IMG/VR virus record: IMGVR_UViG_3300025869_002060
Span: 164,349-228,348 of that record
Direction: 5' to 3' (one strand)
DNA length: 64,000 nucleotides
Below, in pieces: positions 21,580 through 48,070 of this stretch. Position numbers and translations under genes: made by a program. The notes under the pieces are model-generated. The model ran no database searches. It had not been told where the DNA came from and worked only from the letters and a program-made list of their open reading frames with translations. The stretch's first letter is position 1. The number at the start of each line of letters is the position of its first letter.

Positions 21580-21610
21580 GTATATAACAATTAGGAATTA
21601 GGAGTTTTTT

Positions 21611-34655: not shown

Positions 34656-36140
34656 TTAACTGCAAACATCTATGCCGTATTGATCTTCAAAACGATCAGC
34701 ATCAGCTCTAGTGTTTACTATTGGTTCACCTCTGATATTTAAACTGGTGTTTAGTAACATTGGGCATCCAGTTAGTATAAACCATTTTTCTAACATCTCT
34801 CTAATATGTTTAAACTCTGGCTCTTTACCTACAGTTTGTACTCTGCTTGAATTGTCAACATGACATATAGCAGGAAACTTTTTTGGAGATTTACATATTC
34901 CAACACTTTGCATATACGGACTATGAACCCAAGCCTTGGGCAAATCAAAATATGCTTGTGCTTGTTCTTCTAATATCATTGGAGCAAACGGCCTAAACTT
35001 TTGTCTACGTTTAATTTCGTTTACTCTATCTTTAATATCATCTCCTCTTGGATCTGCTAGTAAACTTCTATTGCCTAATGCTCGTGGTCCAAACTCTGCA
35101 CGACCACTTGCTACACCTACAATTTGTTTTTCTAATAATAGATCAAGTAATTGGTCCACTGGATATTCACCCGGGATATCACAGCCCAAAAACGGACCTT
35201 GCCAGTTAAGTTTCTTTTTATAACTCAATGCCGCCGCACCTAAACTGCTACCTGCATCACCTGGGTTAGGCATAATCCAAATATTATCAAAACTATCAAT
35301 TTTACTATTAGCGACACAATTGAGAGCAACACCACCCATTAATACCAAGTTGTTGCTGTAAAAACTATGCCTTGCTCTATTGCATAAACGAGTTACCAAG
35401 TGTTCAGTTATAGCTTGTACACTAGCCGCAAGATCAATATCCAATGCTCCTGGCAAATAATCTTCGTCAATACCAGCATGACAATTTTGTCTAAATGTAA
35501 AGTCTCGTGAGTTTAGAATAAAGTCGTTGTATATTGTATCAAAATGTTTATTCTCACCCCAAGCGGCCATGCCCATAAAAATATACTCTTCGTCCATTGG
35601 CTTTAAACCAACATGTTTTGTCATTGCACTATAGAATAATCCCAAACTATGAGGATAACCTTGCTTCCATATTTGACGGTATCGTGCAATGCCTTGGTTA
35701 TCATACATTGCTCGCCATATACTAGCGGTTGTAAATTCGCCAATGGCATCTATTACAACTACTGTAGCAACATCATATGGTGATGTTTGAAACCCTGCGG
35801 CCGCATGTGATAAGTGATGATCATACTTATGAATTTTAGTGTTACACTGAAAAGGAACGCCTTGATTCTTTAATACATGCCTTACTGTAATGTTTGACCA
35901 ATCAATTTTTTGGCCTGCATAACACTGTCTTACTTGTTTCTTAATTGGATCTTCGTAGTATGCAATAGTATCAATATCGTCAAAATCAACTTCGCTCAAC
36001 AGCTCACGACATAAGTCTTTATCATTTTTATTTCTACTATATCTTTCGCTATGACTTGCAAATGAAATATTTCCTTGTTCGTCTACAACGCTTACTGCCG
36101 CATCATGAAATCCAGCTGATATTCCTAATATACTCATCAA
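34656..36140 (-). CDS. Carbamoyltransferase (NodU/CmcH/TobZ family)
   Basis: GISAGFHDAA, HHLSHAA, VIDAIGE, GGVALNC, GDAGSSLG, EFGPRALGNRS, FRPFAP, LLNTSLN. Confidence 0.95.
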   Translation of the reverse strand: MMSILGISAGFHDAAVSVVDEQGNISFASHSERYSRNKNDKDLCRELLSEVDFDDIDTIAYYEDPIKKQVRQCYAGQKIDWSNITVRHVLKNQGVPFQCNTKIHKYDHHLSHAAAGFQTSPYDVATVVVIDAIGEFTTASIWRAMYDNQGIARYRQIWKQGYPHSLGLFYSAMTKHVGLKPMDEEYIFMGMAAWGENKHFDTIYNDFILNSRDFTFRQNCHAGIDEDYLPGALDIDLAASVQAITEHLVTRLCNRARHSFYSNNLVLMGGVALNCVANSKIDSFDNIWIMPNPGDAGSSLGAAALSYKKKLNWQGPFLGCDIPGEYPVDQLLDLLLEKQIVGVASGRAEFGPRALGNRSLLADPRGDDIKDRVNEIKRRQKFRPFAPMILEEQAQAYFDLPKAWVHSPYMQSVGICKSPKKFPAICHVDNSSRVQTVGKEPEFKHIREMLEKWFILTGCPMLLNTSLNIRGEPIVNTRADADRFEDQYGIDVCS

Positions 36141-36759
36141 TAACCTTTGCTATTCTTTTGTGTCCAAGTTCTAAAGGATGACCTCCAGGACCTTTAACAC
36201 AATTTCCTTGCCATTCTAGTATGCCGTCTTTAGGCCAACCAACAAAGAATCTTTTATCAATTTCTCTAAACTGAGCTTCAAGAAGTTGATAGTATTCGTC
36301 ATAGTAACCTTGTAAACCAGCTACATTATACATTAGATAACGTTGATTACGATTTAGTAAAAATCCTTGCAATGCAATTATCTGATTAAACTGTTTTCGA
36401 AATCCCCAAGCGATATCATAACTATACTTATAATAGTCTGTTATCCAGTCTGGTTCTTTTTGTGTTCGAGCACGAATTGACATGAACTGCGAAGGTTCTG
36501 TATTTGGTAAATCAAGTGCTTCAAAACGACTTTGTTCCGGCCAACTTATTAATACTAAATCAAATGTTTCGTTGATTAAAGTTTCAATTGTTGTTCTAAA
36601 AACATAATCAGAACTAGCACCGCAAAGTCCTAGATTAACTACTTCGTCAAAGCCCAATAAGTTTTTCATTAGATATGGGTAGGCATCAACTTCTCTATTA
36701 GGAAGTTCATCTCCATATGTAAAACTATCACCAACGGTTAATAATCTACGTTTACTCAT
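36103..36759 (-). CDS. SGNH-like protein
   Basis: VGDSFTYG, NLGLCGASSD, GGHPLELGH. Confidence 0.65.
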   Translation of the reverse strand: MSKRRLLTVGDSFTYGDELPNREVDAYPYLMKNLLGFDEVVNLGLCGASSDYVFRTTIETLINETFDLVLISWPEQSRFEALDLPNTEPSQFMSIRARTQKEPDWITDYYKYSYDIAWGFRKQFNQIIALQGFLLNRNQRYLMYNVAGLQGYYDEYYQLLEAQFREIDKRFFVGWPKDGILEWQGNCVKGPGGHPLELGHKRIAKVIDEYIRNISWIS

Positions 36760-36860
36760 TTATAGATAAACGGATCCCGTTTGCGTAATTCTTTAAGTTT
36801 TTTGCGATATGCAATCTCTAATTTCACACGGTTAATTAAACTCTTAAACCATTTGATCAT
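36756..36860 (-). CDS. 34-aa basic micro-protein (not in ORF track)
   Basis: MIKWFKSLINRVKLEIAYRKKLKELRKRDPFIYK; stop overlaps the next ATG (ATGA). Confidence 0.75.
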   Translation of the reverse strand: MIKWFKSLINRVKLEIAYRKKLKELRKRDPFIYK

Positions 36861-37626
36861 TGAAAAACTCCTGCATTAGGTTTGCGGCTGATTTATGTGC
36901 ATCTTCTAAGGGGTGTGTAGTGCCTACCTTGTATTTATTCTCTAGTGCCCACTGGTAAAAACCTCTAGGGTTCTGAGTTTCACCATTCTTTGTTCCTTCT
37001 GGAAACCAAAACCATTTGTTCATATCTATTAGATTGTACAAAGTTTTGATTGACACATCGGCATTTTCTATTGTATAATTGTATAATATACAGTTGTCAG
37101 CACAGGTAAACATGTAGGGAATACTATTAGATTTTAAGTAGTTTTGTAAGTACACTATTTCTTTTAGTGTGCTATATATTTCCCAGTATTCACTGCTACC
37201 AACATGTTTATAGAATGTTTGAGCAAAGCCAGCAACACCTGTCTCGTTTGCTCTTTTAATAGTATCTTGTTGAGCCGTTAGAATACCATCATCTTGGGTA
37301 TGGAACTCTTTTTCAATTGAAGATAAGTCACTTTCAATTGTCCACGAGTTAATTGAATACCAATGCCCTGTACGTTGTTTGGTATCGTAATTGAAACGAA
37401 ACTCATAGCGTCCTGGAAATGTCCAACTAACTATAGCAAACTTATCTTTTGTTAATGACTCTAATGCATTAATTGTTTGTCTAGCGATTGCTTCGTTGCT
37501 ATTGCCAGGTGTTGCTACATTTATATAATTGGTATATTGTTGACTAACCAACTTTGTAAAATTATTATCAGAGTGTTCTAGTTCACTTCCTGCAACAAAA
37601 CTATCACCCCCGGCTACTATAATCAT
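36844..37626 (-). CDS. SGNH-like protein
   Basis: AGGDSFVAG, NVATPGNSNE, TTHPLEDAH. Confidence 0.65.
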   Translation of the reverse strand: MIIVAGGDSFVAGSELEHSDNNFTKLVSQQYTNYINVATPGNSNEAIARQTINALESLTKDKFAIVSWTFPGRYEFRFNYDTKQRTGHWYSINSWTIESDLSSIEKEFHTQDDGILTAQQDTIKRANETGVAGFAQTFYKHVGSSEYWEIYSTLKEIVYLQNYLKSNSIPYMFTCADNCILYNYTIENADVSIKTLYNLIDMNKWFWFPEGTKNGETQNPRGFYQWALENKYKVGTTHPLEDAHKSAANLMQEFFNDQMV

Positions 37627-38677
37627 AACCTGGTTTTAACCTTTCAATTTGTACGTCATAATAATCCTTGTCTGTCCAGCAATAATCAAAATCACATGAA
37701 GCCTCAAGTGTTTCAATTTTTACAATGTCTAAGTGTTCGCCAATGATCTCCCACACTGTTTCAGGATTGTCTGTACCAAAACTACCTACTAGATCAACTT
37801 GTCCAACTGAATGATATCCATAGTTGTATTGTGTGTCATTGTGATTAAAACCATTACGCTCTAACCAATCTGCATATTCATCCATTCGTTGCTTGTGCCA
37901 CGGATATTCACCAGCATAGGTAATATCACGTGACCATTCAATGTCAAACTCGCCACTGTAGTAACGCAAATGAGTAATCTCTTCACACATTGCGTCTGTT
38001 AAATCAGGTGCGCCTTCATCAACGAACACTTCATATAATGTTTTTCCTACTTGAGTCCAGTGTTGGTAAACAGTACCAAAGGTACGATCATATCTTTCCT
38101 TGTTGAATGTCCGCTTATGCTCGTCGGGATAATCAAATCTAGGAGCATTTAAAAATGTTGTGATCTGAGACGGACGCATCCACTGCGGTGCCTCAATTTG
38201 TTTCTTCTGGCTCAGCATTAATGATTCTGCTTCGTGACACAAATTGTTTAACTGTCTAATAGCAAACTTAGTTTCGTGATTTGCTTTTTTATACCAGTCA
38301 CTCAATCCCCATGCACTACCTTGTAGTACTTCAAAATGATTATGCAATCTGTTCATAATATCCTGATTTGGGTTCATGCCATCTCTCAATGTTTTTGGTG
38401 TAAATATTTCTCTTATTATATACTCCTTGTTAAAAAAATCATTGATAGTATTTTTGACCCACTGTAACTCTTTACATATGAAGTTAATATCTCTAGCAGT
38501 ATTAGGAAAACCCAAGAATAAAAAGTTCTTTTCTAAGTAGGAATCATTTATTAATAATCCATTTAATGCACCTAGCCAGTTACGTCCCATTATAGTTTGC
38601 TCAACGTCAATATGAAAATCAACTGTTTTACTTTTGTTAACTGGATTTCTTAATACTACTTTAACTTCTCGTGTCAT
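37604..38677 (-). CDS. Hypothetical protein downstream of the radical SAM array
   Basis: About 357 aa, ATGA-coupled to radical SAM gene 38674; start refined to MTREVKV. Confidence 0.75.
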   Translation of the reverse strand: MTREVKVVLRNPVNKSKTVDFHIDVEQTIMGRNWLGALNGLLINDSYLEKNFLFLGFPNTARDINFICKELQWVKNTINDFFNKEYIIREIFTPKTLRDGMNPNQDIMNRLHNHFEVLQGSAWGLSDWYKKANHETKFAIRQLNNLCHEAESLMLSQKKQIEAPQWMRPSQITTFLNAPRFDYPDEHKRTFNKERYDRTFGTVYQHWTQVGKTLYEVFVDEGAPDLTDAMCEEITHLRYYSGEFDIEWSRDITYAGEYPWHKQRMDEYADWLERNGFNHNDTQYNYGYHSVGQVDLVGSFGTDNPETVWEIIGEHLDIVKIETLEASCDFDYCWTDKDYYDVQIERLKPGYDYSSRG

Positions 38678-39972
38678 ATTTCTAACCACCAATCTAATAT
38701 ATCATGCCGTGAAGATAGAATATCTGTCATCGTCAGATCTTGTGTTCTAATTTGTTCTAATTTTAATATACGTGCTTTGCCTTTTTGTAGTCCTGCTTCA
38801 TACTGATCTGGCCATTGTTCTGCAAATGTTGGTCTATTCTTTAGTTGTACTAGCACATCTTTTAACGCACCATCAACTGAAGGAATAAGTTCATCTAACC
38901 ATTTATCCAACAGGTTACGAGGCAATGCCAATGGCGACATTACAATGTCAGGACTAAAACTAAAGATTACTTTAGCAAGTATTCCTACACCTAATCTTTT
39001 TGCGAGTTCTTGTATTTTTTGGACTTCAAAGAGTCCTGGTAAGGTAAGAGTGAAGTCAATACGAATTTGGCGCGAGTGGTTGCTGACCTCAACTCCTTTA
39101 TTGAAGTTTTCAAGCCACTGGTCAAAATTGAGACCTGTTCGAATATACTCTCCAATTCGTCCCGTGCCATCGAGGCTTGCACATATTTGCCAATCACGTA
39201 GCCTAGCCAAAATATCAGTATAAAGATTAGTGCCAGAATAACTAATCCTAGATAAGTTAGTGTTATATCTTGCATAAACATTTGGTCCATCTCCTAGCTC
39301 TATAATTCTCTTCATATACCTCCAATGCTGTTCATACATTAAAGGTTCGCCACCTACCCAGTAGACTTCTTCTACGCGGTGACTTTCAACTGCTTCAGCA
39401 AACTCCTGTTCTATCTGAGTTGACTGAAATTTTTCTATTTGTTTTTTGAGATTAGGTCGCATCCAGTTGTTCTTAGGATCTTCCCAATTTATCATATTAT
39501 GCTTACGTTGCTCGGCTTCCCAACTTGAACTGAGCATATCACCACACATACGACATTTGAAGTTGCATAGGTTTGAAAACCTATAATCCCAACTAACTGG
39601 CTTTAAACGGGTCGTACCATCAGGATCGGTGTGATCCCATATACTATCATATTTATGTCCAAATAGGTTATTAAAATAACTTCTGTAAACATCTGTGTTT
39701 AATAACTTGTTAGTACAAACTTCACATTCACTAAGTTCTTCACCAGACATCATTCTACGCCTAACACTTTTCATGTGTTCGCTGTTCCAGTGTTCGTCTA
39801 GTGTGGTAGGTTTATATTCACCTGTTCCTGAGTCTGTATCAATATACTGCTCAAAGTTCTGTGCTGGTTCTCTACTAGCACAACAAAGTCTGCGTTCTGT
39901 TTGCGGACTTAGGTAGGTATGTGTCCACGGAGCCATACACAAATTTTCAGGTTTTTTGTCTGGTTTTATCAT
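38674..39972 (-). CDS. Radical SAM protein with N-terminal SPASM/twitch-like domain (copy 1)
   Basis: CMAPW...CC...CEVC; CNFKCRMC; VGGEPL; YNTN. Confidence 0.9.
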   Translation of the reverse strand: MIKPDKKPENLCMAPWTHTYLSPQTERRLCCASREPAQNFEQYIDTDSGTGEYKPTTLDEHWNSEHMKSVRRRMMSGEELSECEVCTNKLLNTDVYRSYFNNLFGHKYDSIWDHTDPDGTTRLKPVSWDYRFSNLCNFKCRMCGDMLSSSWEAEQRKHNMINWEDPKNNWMRPNLKKQIEKFQSTQIEQEFAEAVESHRVEEVYWVGGEPLMYEQHWRYMKRIIELGDGPNVYARYNTNLSRISYSGTNLYTDILARLRDWQICASLDGTGRIGEYIRTGLNFDQWLENFNKGVEVSNHSRQIRIDFTLTLPGLFEVQKIQELAKRLGVGILAKVIFSFSPDIVMSPLALPRNLLDKWLDELIPSVDGALKDVLVQLKNRPTFAEQWPDQYEAGLQKGKARILKLEQIRTQDLTMTDILSSRHDILDWWLEI

Positions 39973-39973
39973 A

Positions 39974-40483
39974 TTAAAAATTTACATATAAAGATTTTCG
40001 AATAACATTGTTAGGAACTTTACCTTTCATGCCGTGTTGTATTGTGTGCGAATTTAATAACATTAGTCCAGTATTTACTTCATAGTCAACTTCGTACTTG
40101 ATATCATTTTCATACCAGTAAGTACCCATTGATTCACTGTTACTTTCTTCTCCTAAGTACAACATAATAATATTACAAACACTATTAGGATCATCAGTAT
40201 GCATTGCGTTTTCATAGCCAGCATGATCAAACCATATTTCAACACCACGCACCTTTTGCTTGTCAATATCAAGGCTAGAAAATCTACCTGCTATTTCATT
40301 GCGTACAATACTATCACGATCAATATCTAACCACCACAACTCTCTGTAGCCTCCAAGATGCCATGTTTCAGTAATAGGGTCAAATTGCGTTGTATGATTA
40401 AACAACTTATTTTTAACACCATTGGGGATATTGTGTTTTAACTTGTATCCGTTTGTGGATATTTGTTGTACCTCACGTATCAC
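39974..40483 (-). CDS. 2OG-Fe(II) oxygenase-like protein
   Basis: MHTD (HxD), IMLYL, TIQHGM, RKSLYVNF. Confidence 0.6.
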   Translation of the reverse strand: MIREVQQISTNGYKLKHNIPNGVKNKLFNHTTQFDPITETWHLGGYRELWWLDIDRDSIVRNEIAGRFSSLDIDKQKVRGVEIWFDHAGYENAMHTDDPNSVCNIIMLYLGEESNSESMGTYWYENDIKYEVDYEVNTGLMLLNSHTIQHGMKGKVPNNVIRKSLYVNF

Positions 40484-41696
40484 TGTAACCCATTGCCTTT
40501 GCTATTTGTGTATGTGTTTCTAAAAAGTTTTCTTTACGATATGTATCTGTTTGTTTCATTAATCTAACAAAGTCTTTACCATTACTGCTAGGTCCATTGT
40601 CAATAAACTTTATTAGTTTATCAATTTCATTTTTATCGTGTGGATGAAATTGATCTTGTTTTAAACGATTGGTTACTATTTGTTTTGCTTCTATTGTCAT
40701 TTCACCAATGTTTTGGTGGCGCGGATCATGTAACATATTAAAGTGATGATAATCAAAGTCCTGTGTACGCATCCAGTCACATAAATCTTTCAAGTAGTAG
40801 ACATTCTGAATATTTACAGTTAAACAAATCTGTAACTTAATATTGTTATTCTGATCACGCAAGTCTCTAAAACGTTTTATATTTTCGCATACTTCGTCCC
40901 AGCGAGCTCCAAAACGTTCGTACTCAAATCGTTTGCCTACGTTATCAATACTAAATGCAATCTCAACATACTTAAACTCTTTCCATAAATGTACAAACTC
41001 TTCTGGATATTGTGTGCCGTTGGTATTGTAATGTATTTCAATATCTTTTGCAAAGCCGCCGTCAACTGCTTGTTGTAGCAATTGAAAGTGTTCTTTGATC
41101 ATAAAAGGTTCACCACCTGTAAACTCAAAGTATTTTATGTTAGGCAGTAAGTCAATCATGTTCTCCCAAAATACTTCAGACTCACGAGGCCACTTGCCAT
41201 CTTTAAGCCACTTGTATGCAATATGATCCTTGGCATTTCTATTTTTGTATTTGCGTATATAATCAATTTCTTCTCTTGCCCATTTACTGCTTGACCAACT
41301 TCCACATATACGACATTTAAGATTACAAATGTTTCCAAGTTTTAGATCAATAAACCATAAACTGTCAGGATTGGTGTCAGAAAAATCTATCAACGGGCGT
41401 TCATGTTTGAAACGCACATCTGTGTTCATGCGTTTGCTTGTGCGTCCTGCATCTTCTTCATCCCAACAGCGACTACATGTTTTAGGTTTTTCTCCACGCA
41501 AAAACTGTTCACGTAAATCAACCATGTATTCGCTTTTATATATTTCTTCAAGTGTATTTTCTCGTAGTGCATACTTTGTACCATCTGGTTTTGTAATTTC
41601 GTCCATTGCTAAACAACAAGGTCGACTGGTACCCATTGGTGTTGTTTCCATACTAACCCAAGGTAACATACATATTGTCTTGGAATTATTATCCAC
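40473..41696 (-). CDS. Radical SAM protein with N-terminal SPASM/twitch-like domain (copy 2)
   Basis: CMLPW...CC...CSRC; CNLKCRIC; TGGEPF; YNTNG. Confidence 0.9.
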   Translation of the reverse strand: MDNNSKTICMLPWVSMETTPMGTSRPCCLAMDEITKPDGTKYALRENTLEEIYKSEYMVDLREQFLRGEKPKTCSRCWDEEDAGRTSKRMNTDVRFKHERPLIDFSDTNPDSLWFIDLKLGNICNLKCRICGSWSSSKWAREEIDYIRKYKNRNAKDHIAYKWLKDGKWPRESEVFWENMIDLLPNIKYFEFTGGEPFMIKEHFQLLQQAVDGGFAKDIEIHYNTNGTQYPEEFVHLWKEFKYVEIAFSIDNVGKRFEYERFGARWDEVCENIKRFRDLRDQNNNIKLQICLTVNIQNVYYLKDLCDWMRTQDFDYHHFNMLHDPRHQNIGEMTIEAKQIVTNRLKQDQFHPHDKNEIDKLIKFIDNGPSSNGKDFVRLMKQTDTYRKENFLETHTQIAKAMGYSDT

Positions 41697-43014
41697 GTGC
41701 CGACTCCAACTCCGGAAATGTTTTCCAAAAATCTTCGTTGCGTATGCGATCTAACTTTGTAATTTCTTCTTCAAACCTTGGCCATTCTTTTGATCCATCG
41801 TTGCTCATCATAAAGTTAATAGCACTTTCAAATCCTGTTGTTGCTCTACGTAACTTATCTTGTGGATCTAACCATTCAATGTGTTTGCGATATGCAGGTT
41901 CAATAACTTCTTTTTTAAACTTCTCTGGAAAAATATCAATACGATACCATTCAGGACTTTGACAAATATTAACATTAAAATCCTGTGGTTGAATAAACCC
42001 TTTTTCAACCCAGTCTTTGTGAAAGTCTAGTACATGTAAAACGTTTTGACTAGTGACTGTAGCACTAACATAAAAGTCAACATGTGGCACTTCAGCCATC
42101 ATACGTACTCTGTTTTCTTCAGTCTGTTTCCAATCTGCACCTTTGCGTATTAGCTCTGCTTGTGGACCCATGCCATCAAGACTAGCACCAACATTTACTG
42201 TTTTAAACTGTTTCCAATAATCAAATACATGCTTTTTCTTGTAACGCATTTCACTAAAGTTTGTATTGTATACCAAACGCACATCAGTCTTGCCTAGTTC
42301 AATTAAACGCTCAAGCAAGTAATAATGCTCCTTCATAATCAAAGGTTCACCACCTGCAAAATATACTTGTTCTAAATACGGAATATGTTCTTCCATTTGA
42401 TTCAGCATTCCGTCTTCATCGCCAGTTGTGTACTCTACTCTGGCCATGTCTCTTTTAAGCACATCAGGTACTCTTCCGTACAGTTTTACATGATCGTTGA
42501 ACCAGTTACTGCTAAAAATAGGACCACAAGAACGGCATTTAAAGTTACATAGGTTACTGAAGCGTATATCCCAATAACGCAACTTAAACTCAGGATGTTC
42601 GCCATCTTCTGTTGTTTGATTTACTTCTTCGATCAAATGTCCGTAGTTTCTATTAGCATCATTTCGCATACTAAAGAAACCGTTTTGTTCTTGTTCATAG
42701 CATTTAGTACATTCTTTACATGGCTTGTCTTCAAGCATGTTTTTACGCATTGTTTTATACGCATCTTGATTCCATACTTCACGCATTGTGTCTTTGCGTA
42801 AGTCTCCAATTGGATGCCAGTAATCACCTAAACAACAAGGATACACTCTACCATCTGGAAAGGCATGCATGTGAACCCAAGGCAACATACAAAAGTTATC
42901 CTCTTTGACAAGTCTGCTAAGTTGCTTGTCTGTTAAATCTTCAGGCTTGACAAAGTGCGGAGTTCTTTCGTTATAATCATATTTTTCATAAAAGTCTTTT
43001 TTACTTGAGTCCAT
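41689..43014 (-). CDS. Radical SAM protein with N-terminal SPASM/twitch-like domain (copy 3)
   Basis: CMLPW...CC...CTKC; CNFKCRSC; AGGEPL; YNTN. Confidence 0.9.
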   Translation of the reverse strand: MDSSKKDFYEKYDYNERTPHFVKPEDLTDKQLSRLVKEDNFCMLPWVHMHAFPDGRVYPCCLGDYWHPIGDLRKDTMREVWNQDAYKTMRKNMLEDKPCKECTKCYEQEQNGFFSMRNDANRNYGHLIEEVNQTTEDGEHPEFKLRYWDIRFSNLCNFKCRSCGPIFSSNWFNDHVKLYGRVPDVLKRDMARVEYTTGDEDGMLNQMEEHIPYLEQVYFAGGEPLIMKEHYYLLERLIELGKTDVRLVYNTNFSEMRYKKKHVFDYWKQFKTVNVGASLDGMGPQAELIRKGADWKQTEENRVRMMAEVPHVDFYVSATVTSQNVLHVLDFHKDWVEKGFIQPQDFNVNICQSPEWYRIDIFPEKFKKEVIEPAYRKHIEWLDPQDKLRRATTGFESAINFMMSNDGSKEWPRFEEEITKLDRIRNEDFWKTFPELESARG

Positions 43015-44356
43015 TGTACCACTCCGCTAAGGTTGGAAACGTAGCGGTAAAGTCTTTACCTCTGCGTTGGTCGTATTGTGAATAAAATTGTTTAAAATCG
43101 TTGTGAAGTTTAGGCATTTCAAATGTTTCTCTATGTGGAGTTTTAACAACATCTAAGTAATCAATTAAACGCTGTACATGATTAATTTCGTGTTCATGTA
43201 ACATTGCATGGTTACGAAAATTAGATAACCAATCTTGTAATCTTTGCTTGTGATGTTCCCTAATCTCGTCAGGTAACACAAGAGGTGATTGGAAACTTGG
43301 AAAGCGTAAAATATTGAGTGTAAAGTTTGGAAAGTCTCTGCCAAACTTTGATTTCCATTCTAGCATCCACGTTAAGAACTCAGGTAAACTTTCTAAGCAT
43401 AATGCATTAATGGTATTCATTACATGCAATCCTCGTAGTTTACCACTTCGTATCAGTAGCTCTACGTTTGCTGTCCATTGTTTCCATTCTAATCCATCAC
43501 GTATATATTCGGCTTGTAGACCCATACTCTCGTTGCTGGTATATAAGTCTAATTCAAGATGTTCTGCCGCATCAAGCAATTTCTCAACTTTTTCGCTTTC
43601 AAATCCCAAGTTGCTGTTAATAGCAATTCGAGTTTTTGACTTACCTTTGTTTTCTTTAAACCAATCAAACAGGTCCCATGTGTGACCGCTCATCAACGGC
43701 TCTCCGCCAGTGATACGTAATTCTTGTAATGTTTCGTGCAAGTCACTTTCCCACCATTTGAAAAATGCTTCAACGTATGGGTTGGTTTCGGAATACTTGT
43801 ACAAACTTGCTTCGTTGTGTTCATGTGTAAAGTGATTACGACCATCGCTTTCTAGACCGGCATATGCTCCATTCTTTTTAATATCTTTAACCCATGTAGT
43901 ACTGAACGCTGGGTTACAATAACTACATGCAAACTGACAAGTTCTATCAAAAGCAATTTCAAGTGTACGCAAGTTAACATCATCTTCCGGAGGTGTATTG
44001 TATGCATCTTGTAATAATTTGTCACTGTAGATTACACTTTTGTAAACTCTATCACTGATATTATCTCGTTTAATATCTTCAATCTTCCAGCAGTATTCGC
44101 AACCTTTGGGCCTTACACCTGTGAGCATATCAGCACGATCTTGTTTCTTTTGTGAACTGTTGTGCAATGCTCTTGGATTAAATTTAACTTCATCAACATC
44201 AACTTTGTGTGCTGGTGGATGATGACAACTTGTAGTCATACCACTGCCTAACCATATAGTAGCATTATACCATTTGGCTCCACAAAAACTTGCACTCTTT
44301 GGATCAAGAATTCTTTTTCTAAATTCTAAATCTGTTTCATTAACTAACTTAGGCAA
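43001..44356 (-). CDS. Radical SAM protein with N-terminal SPASM/twitch-like domain (copy 4, AKW subtype)
   Basis: CGAKW...SCHHP...CEYC; CQFACSYC; TGGEPL. Confidence 0.9.
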   Translation of the reverse strand: MPKLVNETDLEFRKRILDPKSASFCGAKWYNATIWLGSGMTTSCHHPPAHKVDVDEVKFNPRALHNSSQKKQDRADMLTGVRPKGCEYCWKIEDIKRDNISDRVYKSVIYSDKLLQDAYNTPPEDDVNLRTLEIAFDRTCQFACSYCNPAFSTTWVKDIKKNGAYAGLESDGRNHFTHEHNEASLYKYSETNPYVEAFFKWWESDLHETLQELRITGGEPLMSGHTWDLFDWFKENKGKSKTRIAINSNLGFESEKVEKLLDAAEHLELDLYTSNESMGLQAEYIRDGLEWKQWTANVELLIRSGKLRGLHVMNTINALCLESLPEFLTWMLEWKSKFGRDFPNFTLNILRFPSFQSPLVLPDEIREHHKQRLQDWLSNFRNHAMLHEHEINHVQRLIDYLDVVKTPHRETFEMPKLHNDFKQFYSQYDQRRGKDFTATFPTLAEWYNGLK

Positions 44357-45440
44357 AGTGTTCCTCCATTTCGGATATATAGTTTACTATCTTTGTGCCA
44401 CGATGTCTATCTCTAATAGTAATCATATCTAAAAATTCTTTCCAGTTTTCTTCATTGGAGTTATCCAATGTATTGATAATTCCTTCTAAACCATTTTGTG
44501 CTTCGTAGTCAACAGCACGAAGTCTATCTTGTGCAAGTTGAGCTAATTCTTTTGGCAAACATACAGGTGCCAGATAATGAGGCTTTGTTAATATATCAAA
44601 CTGTACAAAAAGCTCTTCCTGTTCAGCCCACTCTAATAATCTATCAATATATAATACATTTAAATTTTGTACGACTGTGTTTACAAAAATATTAGCATCG
44701 GGTATTTGACGCATCAACTCTATATTATTAGTTATAACATTCCATTTACTTGGATATCTTATGTAATGATTAAGTTCTGCATATCCGTCAATACTTAAAC
44801 ACATCTTAATGTCGTGTGCTGACAATACATCAACCCAACTTTGATCAAATTTAGTTCCATTTGTTGCAATCATTATTTCTTTACGTTGTGTCAATGATGA
44901 AAGAATATCGCGAACCCAAGGCAACATAAACGGTTCGCCTCCTCTTAGAATAAAACTATCACAGTGTTCCATTATTTCAAGTATCTTGTAATTGTCTTTT
45001 TCATTCCAATCGTATTTCTTCTGATCCCATACCTTGTCAAACAGTTTGTTTTCTTCAACTAAAAATTGACTACTAGATTGCGGATTACACATCAAGCATT
45101 TCAAGTTACATAAATTTGATAACTGTATTTCCCAATCCAGTGGCTGTTCTGTTTGTTCTGTTATGTCACTCCAACGTTCATTGCTGTACTGTCGAAAACT
45201 TTTTGATCCTTGCTCCTCTTGTTTATAACAACGAACACATTCATCACTGTGTTCATTGTTCTTTATACGCTTTCTTAGATCATTGAGATAATCGCTATTC
45301 CACCACTCGTCAACAGAGTGTGTTTTCATATTAAAATCTGTTGTAACAAAACTACGACAACAAGGCATAAAACGTCCTTGGGTGTCTACTAGACTATGCA
45401 TAAACGGACGCACACAAAATTTATCGTTATCTTTGAGCAT
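44349..45440 (-). CDS. Radical SAM protein with N-terminal SPASM/twitch-like domain (copy 5)
   Basis: CVRPF...CC...CVRC; CNLKCLMC; RGGEPF; ATNGT. Confidence 0.9.
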   Translation of the reverse strand: MLKDNDKFCVRPFMHSLVDTQGRFMPCCRSFVTTDFNMKTHSVDEWWNSDYLNDLRKRIKNNEHSDECVRCYKQEEQGSKSFRQYSNERWSDITEQTEQPLDWEIQLSNLCNLKCLMCNPQSSSQFLVEENKLFDKVWDQKKYDWNEKDNYKILEIMEHCDSFILRGGEPFMLPWVRDILSSLTQRKEIMIATNGTKFDQSWVDVLSAHDIKMCLSIDGYAELNHYIRYPSKWNVITNNIELMRQIPDANIFVNTVVQNLNVLYIDRLLEWAEQEELFVQFDILTKPHYLAPVCLPKELAQLAQDRLRAVDYEAQNGLEGIINTLDNSNEENWKEFLDMITIRDRHRGTKIVNYISEMEEHFA

Positions 45441-46833
45441 AATATCTACACTGTTTCCAAAACTCTTCCATCTCAGGAAATGTTGCTAAAAAGTTTGTGT
45501 CTCTGCGTTTATCGTGTTCAGTAAAGAACCTATAAAAGTCTGCACGATTGTTTTGCAAATATTGTTCAGGTAATTCATCTCCTTTACGCATCCACGCTAT
45601 ATCTCTACGCATACGCTGTACTTCATAATCTTTAAATCCGTGGAATGGATCGTCTTTGGTTTCTAAGTTTCGTTCCATCCAATTTGCAACTTCTTCTAAT
45701 TTTTCAGCATAAGGCCATGGCAATATCTGTAGACTTTGCCAAGTTGGTTGACGCAACAATGGTGTATCAAACCATATACGCTGATAAGTTGAACTAAACG
45801 CTTTACGTAAATCAAGTATCCATTCTAACTGCTTTTTAATTCCACTCACACTCAAGTTATTCATTGTAATAATAAATGTTAAACTATTACGCTCGGGCAC
45901 CTCTCCTAAATACCTATATACATTATGATGCATACGAGTCCATTGAAGTCCGTGCCTAATATATTCTGCTTGTTCTGGCACACCAGTGTCAAGGCTAACA
46001 TATTGCATAAAATGTTCTATTTGTGTTTTACATAACTTTTTTACGTAACCAATATACTTTTCAAACAGTTTATCTTCAACACTGAAGTTGCTTGTTACAT
46101 TTAGATGTAACTCTGGATTTGGTAATGCTAGTACATAATCAAACACACGATATGTATTGTTATCCATCAACGGTTCACCACCAGTCATACGGAAATGTTT
46201 TAGGTGTGGGTATAACGAGGGCCACCATTCCCAAAACGCATCAACATATGGATTTTCTTCTCTGTGTGGAATTGGTCTATTACGCCCAACAAAATGTTCA
46301 GGTGCATTATGCGGAACACTAGTAGGATATGCTCCTACTTTTTTAGTTTCCTTCATCCATGTGCTACTAAATTGTGGACTGCAATACGAACAGGCCAAGT
46401 TACATGCATTATTAAAATTAACTTCAACGTAACTAGGTTTCCAGTCTTCGTCACCAGTACTGTTTTTAATTGCTTCGTAATCACTGGCCGCCCAAGGTTC
46501 TCCACTGCGATAATGTCTATCGCTTAGGTTACCTGAATCCTCAATGTTCCAGCAATACTGACACTCTGGAGGACGTTCACCTTTGAGCATCATTTTACGC
46601 TGTTCTTTTTTGTGTTCTGTATTGTGCAATGCATTAGGATCGAGTTTTACTTTCTCGCGATCCATTTGATGCAACGGAGGATGATAGCAACTATTATTCA
46701 GCCCTGTTGGTAAATGAAAACTTACTTGTTTCCATTTTGCTAAACACAAGCCGTGGCCAAGATTATCTTTCATAAACTCGGCACTAGCCATAAACTTACT
46801 TTTATTACCTACGGATTCGTCACCCTTGTTCAT
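45427..46833 (-). CDS. Radical SAM protein with N-terminal SPASM/twitch-like domain (copy 6, AKW subtype)
   Basis: CLAKW...SCYHP...CQYC; CNLACSYC; TGGEPL. Confidence 0.9.
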   Translation of the reverse strand: MNKGDESVGNKSKFMASAEFMKDNLGHGLCLAKWKQVSFHLPTGLNNSCYHPPLHQMDREKVKLDPNALHNTEHKKEQRKMMLKGERPPECQYCWNIEDSGNLSDRHYRSGEPWAASDYEAIKNSTGDEDWKPSYVEVNFNNACNLACSYCSPQFSSTWMKETKKVGAYPTSVPHNAPEHFVGRNRPIPHREENPYVDAFWEWWPSLYPHLKHFRMTGGEPLMDNNTYRVFDYVLALPNPELHLNVTSNFSVEDKLFEKYIGYVKKLCKTQIEHFMQYVSLDTGVPEQAEYIRHGLQWTRMHHNVYRYLGEVPERNSLTFIITMNNLSVSGIKKQLEWILDLRKAFSSTYQRIWFDTPLLRQPTWQSLQILPWPYAEKLEEVANWMERNLETKDDPFHGFKDYEVQRMRRDIAWMRKGDELPEQYLQNNRADFYRFFTEHDKRRDTNFLATFPEMEEFWKQCRYYAQR

Positions 46834-47136
46834 TTACCATCCCATCATAAATCGAGTTTCTTCAGGTACCATTTCTATTGTAAACGGTGGATCAAATGTT
46901 GTGTTAACAATAACACTCAACACTTCTGGTGCATACCCTGCTTGTTGTATATCACTAACAATTTGATCTGCAAACGGACAGAATGCACTTGTTAATGTGT
47001 GCGTGATTGTAACTTCGTATTCGCTTTGATCTATCGCAATATCGTATATCAATCCTAAATCATATACATTACAACTTATTTCTGGATCAAAAACTTTACG
47101 TAAGTTTTCAATAACAATATCTTTATCTATTGCCAT
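46834..47136 (-). CDS. SufT/PaaD-like (DUF59) Fe-S assembly protein
   Basis: LRKVFDPEI..NVYDLGLIYDI; TLTSAFCP; FDPP. Confidence 0.9.
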   Translation of the reverse strand: MAIDKDIVIENLRKVFDPEISCNVYDLGLIYDIAIDQSEYEVTITHTLTSAFCPFADQIVSDIQQAGYAPEVLSVIVNTTFDPPFTIEMVPEETRFMMGW

Positions 47137-47137
47137 T

Positions 47138-48070
47138 TTACCAACCCTCTATTCTGCGAATAACATCAATTTCTTTTGTCATTAGCTCTAAGTTTTTATG
47201 ACCAGTTGCATAGTGATATTTAAAGAAAGCACTTTGTTCTGCATCAAGTTCAACAATATTTAATGCTAATCTATTATTAAGTAATTCTGTAATAGTTTCC
47301 ATGTCATTATGATTTCCTATTGCAGTAACTTCGAGGTATTCTTCATGTAAGTATGCAAGTTTATCAAAGTCTTGTACTTGAGTAAAATCCCAATCCGACA
47401 ACATTGTTTTGTATGTGCCGTACCGAGCTCCGTTGATTGCTTCTTCTCCGTGTTCAACATCACGACCAATTGTTTGCCAAATCTGCAAGTGATCTAGATT
47501 ACGTTTCTTTGCGTTATCATCGAACTCTTGCAGACTTGGCTTGCGTCCACGATCTAAGCACATTTTAACACCTTCGCGAAAACCAGCCCTCCAGGCATGA
47601 TATTGACTTCCGTTAGGATATGTAGTGCTATAGCAGTTGTGCATAGGGTAGTAAGTTTCCTCGAAACAAAACTCTACAGCCGTTTCGTGACTCCCGTCAC
47701 TTGCTTCGTGGGTTCGCATATTGTTAACAAAGCCTTTGCTCCAGACACTCATGCCACCATTACCATACATTAATCCATTAATGTGGTTACGTGCTTTCCA
47801 TCTAAAAGCAGAGTCTTCGCCAGGCGTTTCAATTTGTAAATTAAAAAACTCTGGATCTGGAATATTATCGCCATCAATTAAAACAAAAAAGTTAGTGTCA
47901 CTTGCATCAGCACACGCCTTATGAGCCGCATCTGATCCTTTAACGTTATCTACTCGTTTTGCCCATGGAACAATATTCTGTATTTGTAGCCAGAATTCTT
48001 CTTTCTGAGGTTCGTCATAACTTAAATAGATGCAGTCTAAATCTGCAACATCAGTGATTTTCAAATCCAT
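47138..48070 (-). CDS. GT-A fold glycosyltransferase-like protein
   Basis: DCIYLSYDEP, KGSDAAHKAC, FVLIDGDN (DxD), AWRAGFREGVK. Confidence 0.7.
   Translation of the reverse strand: MDLKITDVADLDCIYLSYDEPQKEEFWLQIQNIVPWAKRVDNVKGSDAAHKACADASDTNFFVLIDGDNIPDPEFFNLQIETPGEDSAFRWKARNHINGLMYGNGGMSVWSKGFVNNMRTHEASDGSHETAVEFCFEETYYPMHNCYSTTYPNGSQYHAWRAGFREGVKMCLDRGRKPSLQEFDDNAKKRNLDHLQIWQTIGRDVEHGEEAINGARYGTYKTMLSDWDFTQVQDFDKLAYLHEEYLEVTAIGNHNDMETITELLNNRLALNIVELDAEQSAFFKYHYATGHKNLELMTKEIDVIRRIEGW

What the first reader, a model, noticed from the sequence alone, without database searches (positions are those of the whole stretch)
38674..46833. Array of six radical SAM enzymes with the SPASM/twitch-like domain at the N-terminus
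Seen: six paralogs in 8.2 kb, interrupted only by one oxygenase-like ORF. All have the order C..P(W/F)...G...CC...CxxC (copies 1, 2, 3, 5; copy 1 lacks the G) or C.AKW...SC.HP...CxxC (copies 4, 6), followed by CX3CX2C plus a shared S(S/T)x(W/F) and GGEP. Established: SPASM/twitch domains normally lie C-terminal to the barrel and act in peptide cross-linking or sugar oxidation/epimerisation. Inference: this is a permuted, expanded family with at least two subtypes performing sequential radical steps on a shared substrate, probably a glycan or virion protein. Maintaining six O2-sensitive enzymes implies strong selection.
Basis: partly seen in the sequence, partly recalled or inferred. Interest (0 to 1): 0.8.

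Follow-up and report, generated by a model that had tools for sequence, protein, structure and literature searches.

The report
Phage array of N-terminal-twitch radical SAM enzymes
A marine jumbo phage carries six tandem genes for an already catalogued but functionally unstudied kind of iron-sulfur radical enzyme, set inside a sugar-chain-building gene island next to its tail fibres, so they most likely edit a glycan by radical chemistry.

Summary
Six same-strand, start/stop-overlapping ORFs (38674-46833) are paralogous radical SAM proteins, and each has a four-Cys auxiliary-cluster domain in front of the CX3CX2C core. One small ORF that looks like a 2OG-Fe(II) oxygenase interrupts them.

The "permuted family" is not new as a family. 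All six score 281-406 bits against NCBIfam NF033640 (N_Twi_rSAM, cut-off 170). I found no characterised member, no solved structure and no paper on it.

New evidence:
- The N-terminal domain aligns Cys-for-Cys with the C-terminal twitch domain of BtrN.
- Both subtypes keep four Cys ligands, so no His ligand is needed.
- Paralogs A, C, D, E and F are old orthogroups. They travel together in 260-364 kb marine phage contigs and in a Bacteriovoracaceae chromosome, under strong purifying selection.
- The array is co-conserved with GT8-like and GT-B-like glycosyltransferases and an O-carbamoyltransferase. SGNH-like genes and a DxD protein flank it in the closest relatives, and sugar dehydratase and aminotransferase genes lie nearby in this window.

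Best reading: a multi-step radical glycan-tailoring cassette in the phage's host-recognition island. The substrate is inferred, not shown. Modification of a protein or tail fibre remains a serious rival.

The parts
45427..46833 (-). Paralog A: N_Twi_rSAM of the 'SC.HP' subtype, 468 aa.
   Evidence: NF033640 at 318.8 bits. Orthogroup A holds members from L001, L003, L009, L010 and L024. 79% amino-acid identity to the L001 orthologue, pN 0.157 against pS 0.81.
44349..45440 (-). Paralog B: N_Twi_rSAM of the 'CC' subtype, 363 aa. It is an accessory copy.
   Evidence: NF033640 at 280.8 bits, with Pfam SPASM at residues 9-72 followed by Radical_SAM. Long branch in the tree, absent from L001 and L003. 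A rarer orthogroup, 529 hits at E<=1e-20. It sits at the same A-B-C position in the 338-kb contig L084.
43001..44356 (-). Paralog C: N_Twi_rSAM of the 'SC.HP' subtype, 451 aa.
   Evidence: NF033640 at 307 bits. Sister orthogroup to A with 100% support. The DNA encoding its N-terminal motif has several-fold higher depth in marine metagenomes than the rest of the stretch, probably because related phages share it.
41689..43014 (-). Paralog D: N_Twi_rSAM of the 'CC' subtype, 441 aa. It is the most typical member of the family.
   Evidence: NF033640 at 406.4 bits, with SPASM at residues 42-105. AlphaFold2 model with pLDDT 93.6 and pTM 0.91. More than 7,700 homologues at 90% clustering, the best at 72-86% identity.
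40473..41696 (-). Paralog E: N_Twi_rSAM of the 'CC' subtype, 407 aa.
   Evidence: NF033640 at 351 bits. Orthogroup E in the tree.
39974..40483 (-). Small ORF of 169 aa that looks like a 2OG-Fe(II) oxygenase.
   Evidence: An HxD...H...R pattern is visible in the translation. Nearest Atlas clusters include PF13640 families. No Pfam, PHROG or PDB sequence hit. Present in L001 and L002 only.
38674..39972 (-). Paralog F: N_Twi_rSAM of the 'CC' subtype, 432 aa.
   Evidence: NF033640 at 299.3 bits. Orthogroup F includes a member from the Bacteriovoracaceae locus L024.
46834..47136 (-). Fe-S cluster assembly protein of the PaaD/SufT-like DUF59 type. It abuts the start codon of A.
   Evidence: PF01883 at E 4.4e-11. 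A homologue occurs in L009, but the ORF at this position in L001 is unrelated. paaD together with many rSAM genes was noted in a marine phage genome (PMC5332604).
37604..38692 (-). Conserved protein of unknown function directly downstream of F. The true start is probably the ATG at residue 6.
   Evidence: Orthologues lie at the same position in L001, L003, L009, L010 and L011. No family, PDB or Atlas lead.
36103..37626 (-). Two SGNH/GDSL-like genes (36844-37626 and 36103-36759). They are candidate sugar O-acyl esterases or transferases.
   Evidence: The 36103-36759 gene hits DUF6071 at 29 bits (curated cut-off 27) and Lipase_GDSL_2 at 22.8 bits, below its 32.9-bit cut-off. The 36844-37626 gene has no family hit; I call it SGNH-like from the G-D-S motif near its N-terminus in the translation. 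Both are conserved in L001 and L003, and the second also in Ralstonia phage RsoM2USA next to its rSAM.
34656..36140 (-). NodU/NolO/TobZ-type O-carbamoyltransferase.
   Evidence: Carbam_trans_N and Carbam_trans_C at E 5.5e-40 and 1e-49. Found within 10 kb of N_Twi_rSAM genes in 12 fetched loci, including phage contigs, a Ralstonia phage, Bdellovibrionia and Bacteroidota. Also adjacent to a family member in Marine virus AG-345-D19.
47138..48070 (-). Conserved 310-aa protein of unknown function with a D-G-D motif. It could be a GT-A-like enzyme.
   Evidence: 57-81% identical orthologues lie upstream of the array in L001, L003, L009, L010 and L011. No significant PDB sequence hit.
48444..50037 (-). 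Two paralogous GT8 (glycogenin-like) glycosyltransferase genes, 48444-49298 and 49291-50037.
   Evidence: A profile of both plus their orthologues hits glycogenin-1 at E 5.5e-5. GT8 is the commonest glycosyltransferase family in pelagimyophage host-recognition clusters (PMC7029224).
32656..33738 (+). GT-B-fold glycosyltransferase-like gene.
   Evidence: AlphaFold2 model with pLDDT 78. Foldseek hits VldE, WaaG, BshA and OtsA at E 1e-4 to 1e-3. Its paralogs are interspersed between the rSAM genes in L010 and L011.
27130..29239 (+). NDP-sugar epimerase/4,6-dehydratase gene plus a DegT-family sugar aminotransferase gene. This is a nearby module for making an amino-deoxy sugar.
   Evidence: PF01370 at E 1.2e-36 and PF01041 at E 5.8e-74.

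Best explanation
**Proposal.** The six genes encode working members of the N_Twi_rSAM family (NCBIfam NF033640).

**Architecture of each protein.**
- An N-terminal twitch domain, whose four Cys should hold one auxiliary [4Fe-4S] cluster.
- A partial TIM-barrel radical SAM core. Its CX3CX2C should hold the SAM-cleaving cluster and its GGEP should bind SAM.
- A helical C-terminal cap.

**The gene set.** The paralogs are not recent duplicates. A, C, D, E and F are old, separately conserved orthogroups inherited as a set, and B is an accessory copy. The whole set lies in one apparent operon inside a glycan-building island next to the tail-fibre genes of a marine jumbo phage distantly related to PA5oct-like phages.

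**Proposed mechanism (inferred).** Each enzyme reductively cleaves SAM to a 5'-deoxyadenosyl radical and abstracts a specific sugar C-H. The twitch cluster acts as electron acceptor or substrate anchor. The steps would be dehydrogenation, epimerisation or deoxygenation, of the kind known for the sugar-acting twitch enzymes.
- The paralogs would act at different positions or stages of one oligosaccharide. That oligosaccharide would be assembled by the neighbouring GT8, GT-B and DxD proteins and finished by O-carbamoylation and O-acylation or deacylation.
- The glycan would decorate either the virion (tail fibres) or the infected cell's envelope.
- The extra Cys of the 'CC' subtype, replaced by Tyr/His-His-Pro-Pro in the 'HP' subtype, is a candidate catalytic difference, for example an H-atom donor.

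**Shown:** family membership, motifs, twitch homology, a confident fold, orthogroup structure, purifying selection and gene context.
**Inferred:** cluster binding, SAM cleavage, sugar substrate, reaction types and the glycan's destination.
For: **Family and fold**
- All six exceed the NF033640 cut-off of 170 bits over their full length. SPASM/twitch precedes Radical_SAM in Pfam.
- The invariant residues are the four twitch Cys, CX3CX2C and GGEP.
- The family profile aligns to the BtrN twitch domain (residues 161-238) at E 1.9e-6. The family Cys sit on BtrN's C169, C187, C232 and C235; the identity of those four as cluster ligands is from my memory of Goldman et al. 2013.
- The AlphaFold2 model of D has pLDDT 93.6, with a beta-hairpin between the first two Cys.
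- Foldseek returns only radical SAM enzymes of the SPASM/twitch neighbourhood: GDGT-MAS, CteB, anSME, BlsE, MoaA, viperin and DesII.

**Conserved set**
- The tree gives starred orthogroups A, C, D, E and F, each holding the window, L001, L003, L009, L010 and the Bacteriovoracaceae locus L024.
- L024 lies next to obg and rplU, so it is chromosomal.
- pN is far below pS in every orthologue pair tested.

**Glycan context**
- GT8-like pair and GT-B-like gene with paralogs interleaved among the rSAM genes in L010 and L011.
- Carbamoyltransferase within 10 kb of family members in 12 fetched loci.
- SGNH-like genes, and sugar dehydratase plus DegT aminotransferase.
- In bacterial loci the commonest neighbours are PhyH dioxygenases and GT2. 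One family member is fused to GT2.

**Other**
- An Fe-S assembly gene abuts A.
- Error-free contigs of the region occur in two metatranscriptome runs.
- The phage is found in marine samples from at least ten studies.
Against: - No member of NF033640 has a known reaction, as far as I could find. The reaction types are borrowed from distant twitch enzymes.
- The radical SAM core's best PDB sequence match is a RiPP maturase: 8vpo, a cyclopropylglycine synthase, E 1.4e-9.
- Several family members are fused to TPR, Sel1 or ankyrin repeats. That fits protein substrates better than sugars.
- In the Bacteriovoracaceae array no clear sugar genes flank the set. Across 22 bacterial loci, glycosyltransferases are only 4 of 88 neighbours.
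- The sugar dehydratase and aminotransferase genes are 9 kb away on the other strand.
- Reads from the RNA libraries cannot be told from carried-over DNA.
Confidence: 0.5

Rival explanations
1. **Protein or peptide modification.** The enzymes install radical cross-links, epimerisations or oxidations in a protein. The target could be the adjacent tail-fibre or collagen-like proteins, or a small precursor peptide, as most SPASM/twitch enzymes do. The glycosyltransferases would then glycosylate the same protein, and the small 2OG oxygenase would hydroxylate it.
For: - Most characterised SPASM/twitch enzymes act on peptides or proteins (established knowledge; reviews listed).
- The radical SAM core is closest in sequence to a RiPP SPASM enzyme, 8vpo. 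Foldseek hits include CteB and anSME.
- Family members are fused to TPR (two), Sel1 and ankyrin repeats.
- The array lies 5-10 kb from tail-fibre genes, one of them collagen-like.
- The GT8 match is to glycogenin, which glycosylates a protein.
- Small variable ORFs of 64 and 44 aa follow F in L001 and L003.
Against: - Pfam and NCBIfam find no RiPP recognition element or other peptide-binding domain in any of the six.
- No conserved precursor-like small ORF exists; the window has none downstream of F.
- The co-conserved partners are carbohydrate-type enzymes.
- The cassette also occurs in a Bacteriovoracaceae chromosome without tail fibres.
Confidence: 0.25
2. **Small-molecule pathway.** The island makes a diffusible pseudo-oligosaccharide or aminoglycoside-like metabolite rather than a surface glycan. 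The twitch enzymes would act like BtrN on cyclitol or aminosugar intermediates.
For: - The enzyme classes match those of aminoglycoside pathways. There is a BtrN-like twitch domain, a DegT aminotransferase, a TobZ/NodU-family carbamoyltransferase, and a GT-B model whose top fold hit is the pseudo-glycosyltransferase VldE.
- A cyanomyovirus paper annotates a radical SAM, aminotransferase and amidinotransferase trio as 'antibiotic synthesis genes' (PMC12801897).
Against: - No 2-deoxy-scyllo-inosose synthase or other cyclitol-forming enzyme appeared among the window ORFs scanned.
- The VldE match is weak (E 1e-4, TM 0.35), and ordinary GT-B glycosyltransferases score about as well.
- The position beside the tail fibres fits a surface or virion role better.
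Confidence: 0.08
3. **Nucleic-acid or nucleotide modification.** The array hypermodifies phage DNA or a nucleotide pool to evade host defences.
For: - Phage DNA hypermodification pathways use radical SAM enzymes, aminotransferases, glycosyltransferases and carbamoyl chemistry (my own knowledge of the field).
- The same window carries GTP cyclohydrolase I, PTPS/QueD and a QueE-like radical SAM gene.
- Viperin-family models give weak hits to the core.
Against: - The 7-deazaguanine genes lie 30 kb away on the other strand, and none belongs to the N_Twi family.
- The phage keeps ordinary ThyA and DHFR.
- I saw no DNA-binding, transglycosylase or nucleotide-kinase partner co-conserved with the array.
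- The viperin hits are far below that model's cut-off (16-40 bits against 180).
Confidence: 0.05

Closest known systems
NCBIfam NF033640, N_Twi_rSAM ('twitch domain-containing radical SAM protein')
   Same: All six proteins match the model end to end at 281-406 bits, against a cut-off of 170. They share its architecture of an N-terminal twitch domain followed by the radical SAM core.
   Different: Nothing structural differs. The family is only a sequence-defined subfamily, and I found no assigned reaction, structure or paper. What is added here is the phage setting, the conserved multi-paralog set and its gene context.
BtrN (2-deoxy-scyllo-inosamine dehydrogenase of butirosin biosynthesis; PDB 4m7s/4m7t), the founding twitch enzyme
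   Same: The family's N-terminal domain aligns with BtrN residues 161-238 at E 1.9e-6, with the same spacing C-x17-C...CxxC and Gx4C. Both have one auxiliary cluster, and BtrN has a sugar-like substrate.
   Different: In BtrN the twitch domain follows the barrel; here it precedes it. The cores are only generically related. BtrN has about 250 residues, whereas these proteins carry an extra helical region of about 80 residues at the C-terminus. No orthology is implied.
SPASM-domain radical SAM maturases (anSME, CteB, PqqE, TvgB/8vpo)
   Same: Pfam's SPASM model hits four of the six. The cores are the nearest in sequence and fold.
   Different: There are only 4-5 Cys, enough for one cluster, not the 7-8 Cys that hold two. 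The domain is N-terminal. No RiPP recognition element was found.
Sugar-acting twitch-type or related radical SAM enzymes (BlsE, DesII; from my memory also HygY, SpeY, AprD4)
   Same: BlsE and DesII appear among the fold hits. These enzymes tailor sugars one C-H at a time and give the reaction repertoire proposed here.
   Different: Similarity is remote (TM about 0.3). None has an N-terminal twitch domain, and none occurs as a five- or six-paralog set.
Radical SAM cassettes in host-recognition clusters of marine myophages, and rSAM-rich phage genomes carrying paaD (PMC7029224; PMC5332604)
   Same: The ecological and genomic setting is the same: a hypervariable island with tail fibres, GT8 glycosyltransferases, radical SAM cassettes and a PaaD-like Fe-S factor.
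   Different: Those papers describe T4-like pelagimyophages and environmental genomes of 150-190 kb, and do not identify the family or its domain order. This window's hallmark genes are nearest to PA5oct-like jumbo phages, and related contigs are 260-364 kb.

Membership tests
NCBIfam NF033640 (N_Twi_rSAM) | Whole-protein HMM score above the curated cut-off of 170 bits. | tested here: met
   Scores are A 318.8, B 280.8, C 307.0, D 406.4, E 351.0 and F 299.3 bits, each covering nearly the whole 398-position profile.
NCBIfam NF033640 (N_Twi_rSAM) | Twitch-type Cys domain located N-terminal to the CX3CX2C core. | tested here: met
   The four invariant Cys lie 50-110 residues upstream of CX3CX2C in all six. 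Pfam SPASM precedes Radical_SAM.
Radical SAM superfamily | CX3CX2C cluster motif, a GGE-type SAM-binding motif and a partial (beta/alpha)6 barrel. | tested here: met
   CX3CX2C and GGEP are invariant. The AlphaFold2 model shows alternating strands and helices after the motif. Every fold hit with E<=0.001 is a radical SAM enzyme.
Radical SAM superfamily | Reductive cleavage of SAM to a 5'-deoxyadenosyl radical. | not testable with these tools
   This needs anaerobic biochemistry.
Twitch domain (Grell, Goldman and Drennan 2015) | Three or four Cys for a single auxiliary [4Fe-4S] cluster, with a beta-hairpin between the first two Cys followed by a helix. | tested here: met
   There are four invariant Cys, and 4-5 N-terminal Cys across 184 members. 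In the D model the hairpin E48-51/E56-58 lies between C42 and C60, and helices precede C102/C105. The domain aligns Cys-for-Cys to the BtrN twitch.
Twitch domain (Grell, Goldman and Drennan 2015) | Position C-terminal to the radical SAM barrel. | tested here: not met
   The domain is N-terminal in all six. This is the feature that sets NF033640 apart.
Twitch domain (Grell, Goldman and Drennan 2015) | The Cys actually bind an Fe-S cluster placed near the active site. | not testable with these tools
   The session did not expose model coordinates. It needs EPR or Moessbauer spectroscopy, or a structure.
SPASM domain (two auxiliary clusters) | Seven or eight conserved Cys: CX9-15GX4C, gap, CX2CX5CX3C, gap, C. 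| tested here: not met
   Only the CX9-15GX4C part and one CxxC are present, giving 4-5 Cys. The Pfam SPASM hits cover this shared part only.
RiPP radical SAM maturases | A RiPP recognition element, and a precursor peptide gene beside the enzyme. | tested here: inconclusive
   Pfam and NCBIfam find no recognition-element domain, and the RiPP maturase models score far below their cut-offs. No conserved small ORF is present. Such elements and short precursors are easy to miss.
BtrN-type sugar dehydrogenases | Orthology over the whole protein and a cyclitol or aminosugar substrate. | tested here: not met
   Only the twitch domain aligns significantly; the core segment scores 1-3 bits. The substrate cannot be tested here.

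The most novel reading that the evidence does not exclude
The conserved A-C-D-E(-F) set may be a previously undescribed multi-enzyme radical editing line for a complex glycan or glycoprotein. It would be shared between abundant marine jumbo phages and predatory Bdellovibrionota. The 'CC' and 'HP' subtypes would carry out two different, new radical reactions, for example epimerisation with a Cys H-atom donor and oxidation or rearrangement. The product, on the virion or on the infected cell's surface, would set host recognition or exclude rival phages.
Probability: 0.3. Interest if true: 0.75.

Novelty: new member of a known kind. Interest (0 to 1): 0.55.

Why it matters
- **An unexplored enzyme family.** N_Twi_rSAM is very large: 1,586 clusters at 50% identity with E<=1e-30 from one query, and the nearest ESM-Atlas clusters are almost all viral. 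Yet it has no known reaction and no structure.
- **A testable system.** This locus offers five or six distinct orthogroups in one operon, with candidate partner enzymes and an Fe-S assembly factor, in a phage found in seawater samples from many studies.
- **If the glycan reading is right,** marine phages would be using several oxygen-labile radical enzymes to build or edit a surface sugar structure tied to host recognition. The chemistry is probably new.
- **If the protein reading is right,** it would be a new type of virion protein maturation.
- **Either way,** the swapped domain order tests how freely the twitch module can be attached to the radical SAM barrel.

Tried and rejected
- **Near-identical DNA in cultured phages:** none. 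By tblastn only 5 phage records hold a relative of D, at 22-25% identity.
- **PDB by single sequence:** nothing for D or for the 169-aa ORF.
- **Foldseek with the D model:** only remote radical SAM hits (TM about 0.3), so no specific functional transfer is possible.
- **First genome scans:** the six-paralog alignment was too divergent to use, and patterns from D alone found nothing. A 60-sequence alignment then worked.
- **Conserved unknown neighbours:** the 362-aa and 310-aa proteins gave no lead from Pfam, PHROGs, PDB profiles or the Atlas.
- **Promoter and terminator scan:** counts are close to the shuffled expectation, so it does not define the operon. There is one strong hairpin at 50622-50649.
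- **His as a cluster ligand in the HP subtype:** rejected, because all four Cys are retained and the 'SC' Cys is in the same Gx4C register as BtrN C187.
- **Recent tandem duplication:** rejected, because the paralogs are 21-34% identical and fall in separate old orthogroups.
- **Full SPASM domain:** rejected on Cys count.
- **Fe-S assembly gene as a fixed part of the cassette:** rejected, because the ORF at that position in L001 is unrelated.
- **Expression:** metatranscriptome contigs cover the region, but DNA carry-over cannot be excluded, so I claim no transcription.
- **Literature:** the phrases 'N-terminal SPASM' and 'N-terminal twitch' returned no paper.

Full report
**1. What is there**

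Between 38674 and 46833 the minus strand carries six ORFs of 363-468 aa. I label them in transcription order:
- A, 45427-46833
- B, 44349-45440
- C, 43001-44356
- D, 41689-43014
- E, 40473-41696
- F, 38674-39972

A 169-aa ORF (39974-40483) lies between E and F. Consecutive genes overlap by 8-14 nt or abut, and the stop codon of a 100-aa upstream gene (46834-47136) touches the start codon of A. The arrangement looks like one translationally coupled operon. A consensus promoter and terminator scan was no better than shuffled sequence and does not delimit the operon.

The six proteins are 21-34% identical to one another. They share four N-terminal Cys, CX3CX2C, a Ser five residues later, and GGEP. 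F, E, D and B have C..P(W/F)...G...CC...CxxC, with the G missing in F. C and A have C.AKW...SC.HP...CxxC. An HMM built from the six finds no further copy in the 64-kb window.

**2. Family assignment**

Every one of the six matches NCBIfam NF033640, 'twitch domain-containing radical SAM protein' (short name N_Twi_rSAM). Scores are 281-406 bits over the full profile against a curated cut-off of 170. All other radical SAM models score far below their own cut-offs. Pfam places its SPASM model in front of Radical_SAM in B, D, E and F.

I found no paper that names it or uses the phrases 'N-terminal SPASM' or 'N-terminal twitch'. The RadicalSAM.org paper remarks that some members of the SPASM/twitch megacluster have their extra Cys N-terminal to the barrel, and that no structures exist for them (PMC9477430).

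**3. Is the N-terminal domain a twitch domain?**

I built a 65-sequence family profile and searched it against PDB sequences.
- Profile positions 7-81 matched BtrN residues 161-238 at E 1.9e-6.
- The family's Cys lie on BtrN's C169, C187, C232 and C235. That these four ligate BtrN's auxiliary cluster is from my memory of Goldman et al. 2013.
- The spacing is the same: C-x17-C with Gx4C, then CxxC.

In that register the first Cys of the 'CC' pair is the ligand. In A and C the 'SC' Cys occupies the same Gx4C register, after a one-residue insertion in the hairpin. The second Cys of 'CC' is therefore an extra, non-ligand residue. In the HP subtype Tyr/His-His-Pro-Pro replaces it. Both subtypes keep four Cys, so no His ligand is needed.

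Across 184 family members in the fetched loci, 148 are 'CC' (median five N-terminal Cys) and 26 are 'SC.HP' (median four). All have CX3CX2C. Four or five Cys fit one cluster, which is a twitch domain. A SPASM domain needs seven or eight.

The AlphaFold2 model of D is confident (pLDDT 93.6, pTM 0.91). It shows a beta-hairpin between C42 and C60, helices leading to C102/C105, a strand-helix barrel after C156, and a helical C-terminal region. The extra C-terminal part means this is a domain-order swap, and a strict circular permutation is not shown.

Foldseek against the PDB returned only remote radical SAM matches: GDGT-MAS, CteB, anSME, BlsE, MoaA, viperin and DesII, with TM about 0.3 and a best E of 9e-6. 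The best sequence match of the core is 8vpo at E 1.4e-9, which is a RiPP cyclopropylglycine synthase. No member of this family has a solved structure.

**4. How widespread, and in what organisms**

- D alone has more than 7,700 homologues among the 90%-identity clusters, the best at 72-86% identity on contigs up to 364 kb.
- In the exhaustive search of 50%-identity representatives, 1,586 clusters score E<=1e-30 and 6,262 score E<=1e-10. These include two-copy fusions.
- The nearest ESM-Atlas clusters are 93-100% viral.
- Only five cultured-phage records hold a relative. Vibrio phages K566 and K567 have 3-4 copies in about 7 kb. Vibrio phage QD01, Ralstonia phage RsoM2USA and a marine single-virus fragment also carry one or more.
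- The window's own DNA occurs nearly identically in marine and seawater metagenomes of at least ten studies from 2014 to 2024.
- Its hallmark genes are nearest to PA5oct-like jumbo phages: the MoxR-type ATPase at 51% identity and a virion protein at 28%.

A scan of one genome per prokaryotic species found 487 relatives, mostly in MAGs of Bdellovibrionota, Bacteroidota and Elusimicrobiota. Tandem arrays are common there too. The clearest bacterial case is a Bacteriovoracaceae contig with eight copies in 12 kb beside obg and rplU. Three 'bacterial' MAG contigs (L009, L010, L011) share the phage island's synteny and are probably phage contigs binned by mistake.

**5. The paralogs are an old, co-inherited set**

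A maximum-likelihood tree of 71 members gives well-supported orthogroups.
- A and C are sister groups (the HP subtype, 100% support). D, E and F each form their own group.
- Each group contains the window's copy together with copies from L001, L003, L009, L010 and the Bacteriovoracaceae array L024.
- B is a long branch.

Related phage contigs carry different combinations:
- A, C, D, E, the small oxygenase-like ORF and F (L001, 262 kb)
- A, C, D, E and F (L003, 364 kb)
- A, B, C, D and E followed by a 289-aa ORF (L084, 338 kb)

B has far fewer relatives than D, 529 at E<=1e-20. The conserved unit is therefore A-C-D-E, usually with F, and B is an accessory copy.

Between the window and L001 or L003, non-synonymous differences are 0.11-0.31 per site while synonymous sites are saturated at 0.68-0.87. 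Where it can be estimated, dN/dS is about 0.1. Each copy is kept by purifying selection, which argues for distinct roles for the copies and against redundancy among them.

**6. Gene context**

*Upstream on the same strand*
- A PaaD/SufT-like Fe-S assembly protein, PF01883 at E 4.4e-11.
- A highly conserved 310-aa protein with a D-G-D motif.
- Two paralogous proteins whose joint profile hits glycogenin (GT8) at E 5.5e-5.

*Downstream*
- A conserved 362-aa protein with no lead.
- Two SGNH/GDSL-like proteins and a NodU/TobZ-type carbamoyltransferase.

*On the opposite strand*
- At 32656-33738, a protein whose model matches GT-B glycosyltransferases (VldE, WaaG, BshA, OtsA; E 1e-4). Its paralogs sit between the rSAM genes in L010 and L011.
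- At 27130-29239, an NDP-sugar dehydratase/epimerase and a DegT aminotransferase.

*Recurring partners and fusions*
- Relatives add an APS kinase.
- The carbamoyltransferase recurs within 10 kb of family members in 12 fetched loci, spanning phages, Bdellovibrionia and Bacteroidota. It also sits next to the family member in Ralstonia phage RsoM2USA and in Marine virus AG-345-D19.
- Among 88 immediate neighbours in 22 bacterial loci, the commonest families are PhyH dioxygenase (5), GT2 (4) and other radical SAM (3).
- Family members are found fused to GT2 (one), TPR (two), Sel1 (one) and ankyrin repeats (one).

*Position in the genome*
- Tail-fibre genes, one of them collagen-like, and a large virion protein lie at 51.6-63.8 kb.
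- A marine T4-like genome with 12 radical SAM genes plus paaD has also been reported (PMC5332604).

**7. Most likely function**

Shown: these are intact, selected members of a two-cluster-type radical SAM family. They are organised as a conserved multi-paralog operon inside an island rich in carbohydrate enzymes.

Inferred: each enzyme cleaves SAM, abstracts a specific C-H, and uses the twitch cluster as an electron sink or substrate anchor. The substrate would be a sugar residue of an oligosaccharide made by the neighbouring glycosyltransferases and finished by carbamoylation and acyl editing. Different orthogroups would act at different positions or steps. The glycan would end up on the virion or on the infected cell's envelope. 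I put this at about 0.5.

The main rival, at about 0.25, is modification of a protein or peptide, such as the tail fibres. In its favour are the RiPP-like core, the TPR, Sel1 and ankyrin fusions and the glycogenin-like GT8. Against it are the lack of a recognition element or conserved precursor gene and the carbohydrate-type partners.

Two further rivals are weaker:
- An aminoglycoside-like soluble metabolite, about 0.08. The enzyme classes match, but no cyclitol synthase was seen.
- Nucleic-acid modification, about 0.05.

An O2-requiring oxygenase-like gene inside the operon, and the phage's occurrence in ordinary seawater samples, suggest the enzymes work in aerobic hosts. Many radical SAM enzymes do.

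**8. Expression**

Two metatranscriptome runs contain error-free contigs covering most of 40-46 kb, at depths similar to the paired metagenome. These are assembled contigs without strand information, and DNA carry-over is not excluded. I treat this as presence only.

**9. Verdict**

It needs three corrections: the family is already named, the domain is a twitch and not a SPASM, and no His ligand is required.
- Novelty: new members of a known but uncharacterised family, in a setting noted only in passing in the literature.
- Interest is moderate to good. The locus is a compact and widespread entry point to a very large family with no known chemistry.

Noticed in passing
window 788-9400 (+ strand): A likely 7-deazaguanine (preQ0-type) module. 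Pfam finds GTP cyclohydrolase I and PTPS/QueD among these ORFs. The 290-aa radical SAM at 8524-9396 weakly matches QueE structures (E 2.5e-5). The same stretch holds a GT1/GT4-like glycosyltransferase (2158-3339) and a second GDP-mannose-dehydratase-like gene. The batch scan did not say which ORF carries which family.
   Followed up: partly
window 20357-22882 (+): A MoxR-type AAA ATPase (51% identical to that of PA5oct-like jumbo phages) is followed by a 423-aa protein. PHROGs labels that protein 'HNH endonuclease' (phrog_1314). The Pfam batch scan reports DUF2201 metallopeptidase and VWA-like domains for one ORF in the batch that included it, which would fit a MoxR-VWA pair, so the PHROG name may be misleading.
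   Followed up: no
window 17924-18952 (-), 33727-34242 (-), 25822-27133 (+): Host-like auxiliary genes are present: a TRAP-transporter DctP solute-binding protein, peptide deformylase, DHFR and thymidylate synthase.
   Followed up: no
L024 6022-18045 (Bacteriovoracaceae MAG UBA6144): Eight N_Twi_rSAM genes lie in 12 kb beside obg and rplU. They include members of the same A, C, D, E and F orthogroups as the phage. The whole set is therefore shared between phages and predatory bacteria, and the direction of transfer is unknown.
   Followed up: partly
L059, L063, L067, L069, L080 (Elusimicrobia MAG MJ-2014_bin-0981): Many contigs of one MAG carry back-to-back stop-free frames of 2-3.4 kb, each containing an N_Twi_rSAM module scoring about 470 bits. 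These may be giant multidomain proteins or an unusual genetic code, and the bin may in fact be a phage.
   Followed up: no
L009, L010, L011 (MAGs labelled Legionellales and Haliscomenobacter): These contigs share the phage island's gene order: GT8 pair, DxD protein, A, C, D, E, F, the 362-aa unknown and the carbamoyltransferase. They are probably phage contigs binned into bacterial MAGs.
   Followed up: partly
window 44200-44400: Metagenome and metatranscriptome contig depth rises several-fold here (up to about ten-fold in one run), with many variant letters. The stretch encodes the N-terminal twitch motif of paralog C. Related phages in the same samples probably share this conserved segment.
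   Followed up: no
window 50611-50649: An 11-bp-stem hairpin with T-runs on both sides overlaps a near-consensus minus-strand promoter-like site (TTGACA-17-TATACT). It lies in the gap upstream of the GT8 genes and may mark the start of the island's transcription unit.
   Followed up: no
window 56162-57970 (-): A tail-fibre protein with collagen-like repeats lies 10 kb from the array. Together with the small 2OG-oxygenase-like ORF, this raises the possibility of collagen-type hydroxylation and glycosylation of fibres.
   Followed up: no
L001 14324-14518; L003 13804-13938: Small ORFs of 64 and 44 aa directly follow paralog F in two relatives. The window has none. I did not examine them as possible precursor peptides.
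   Followed up: no
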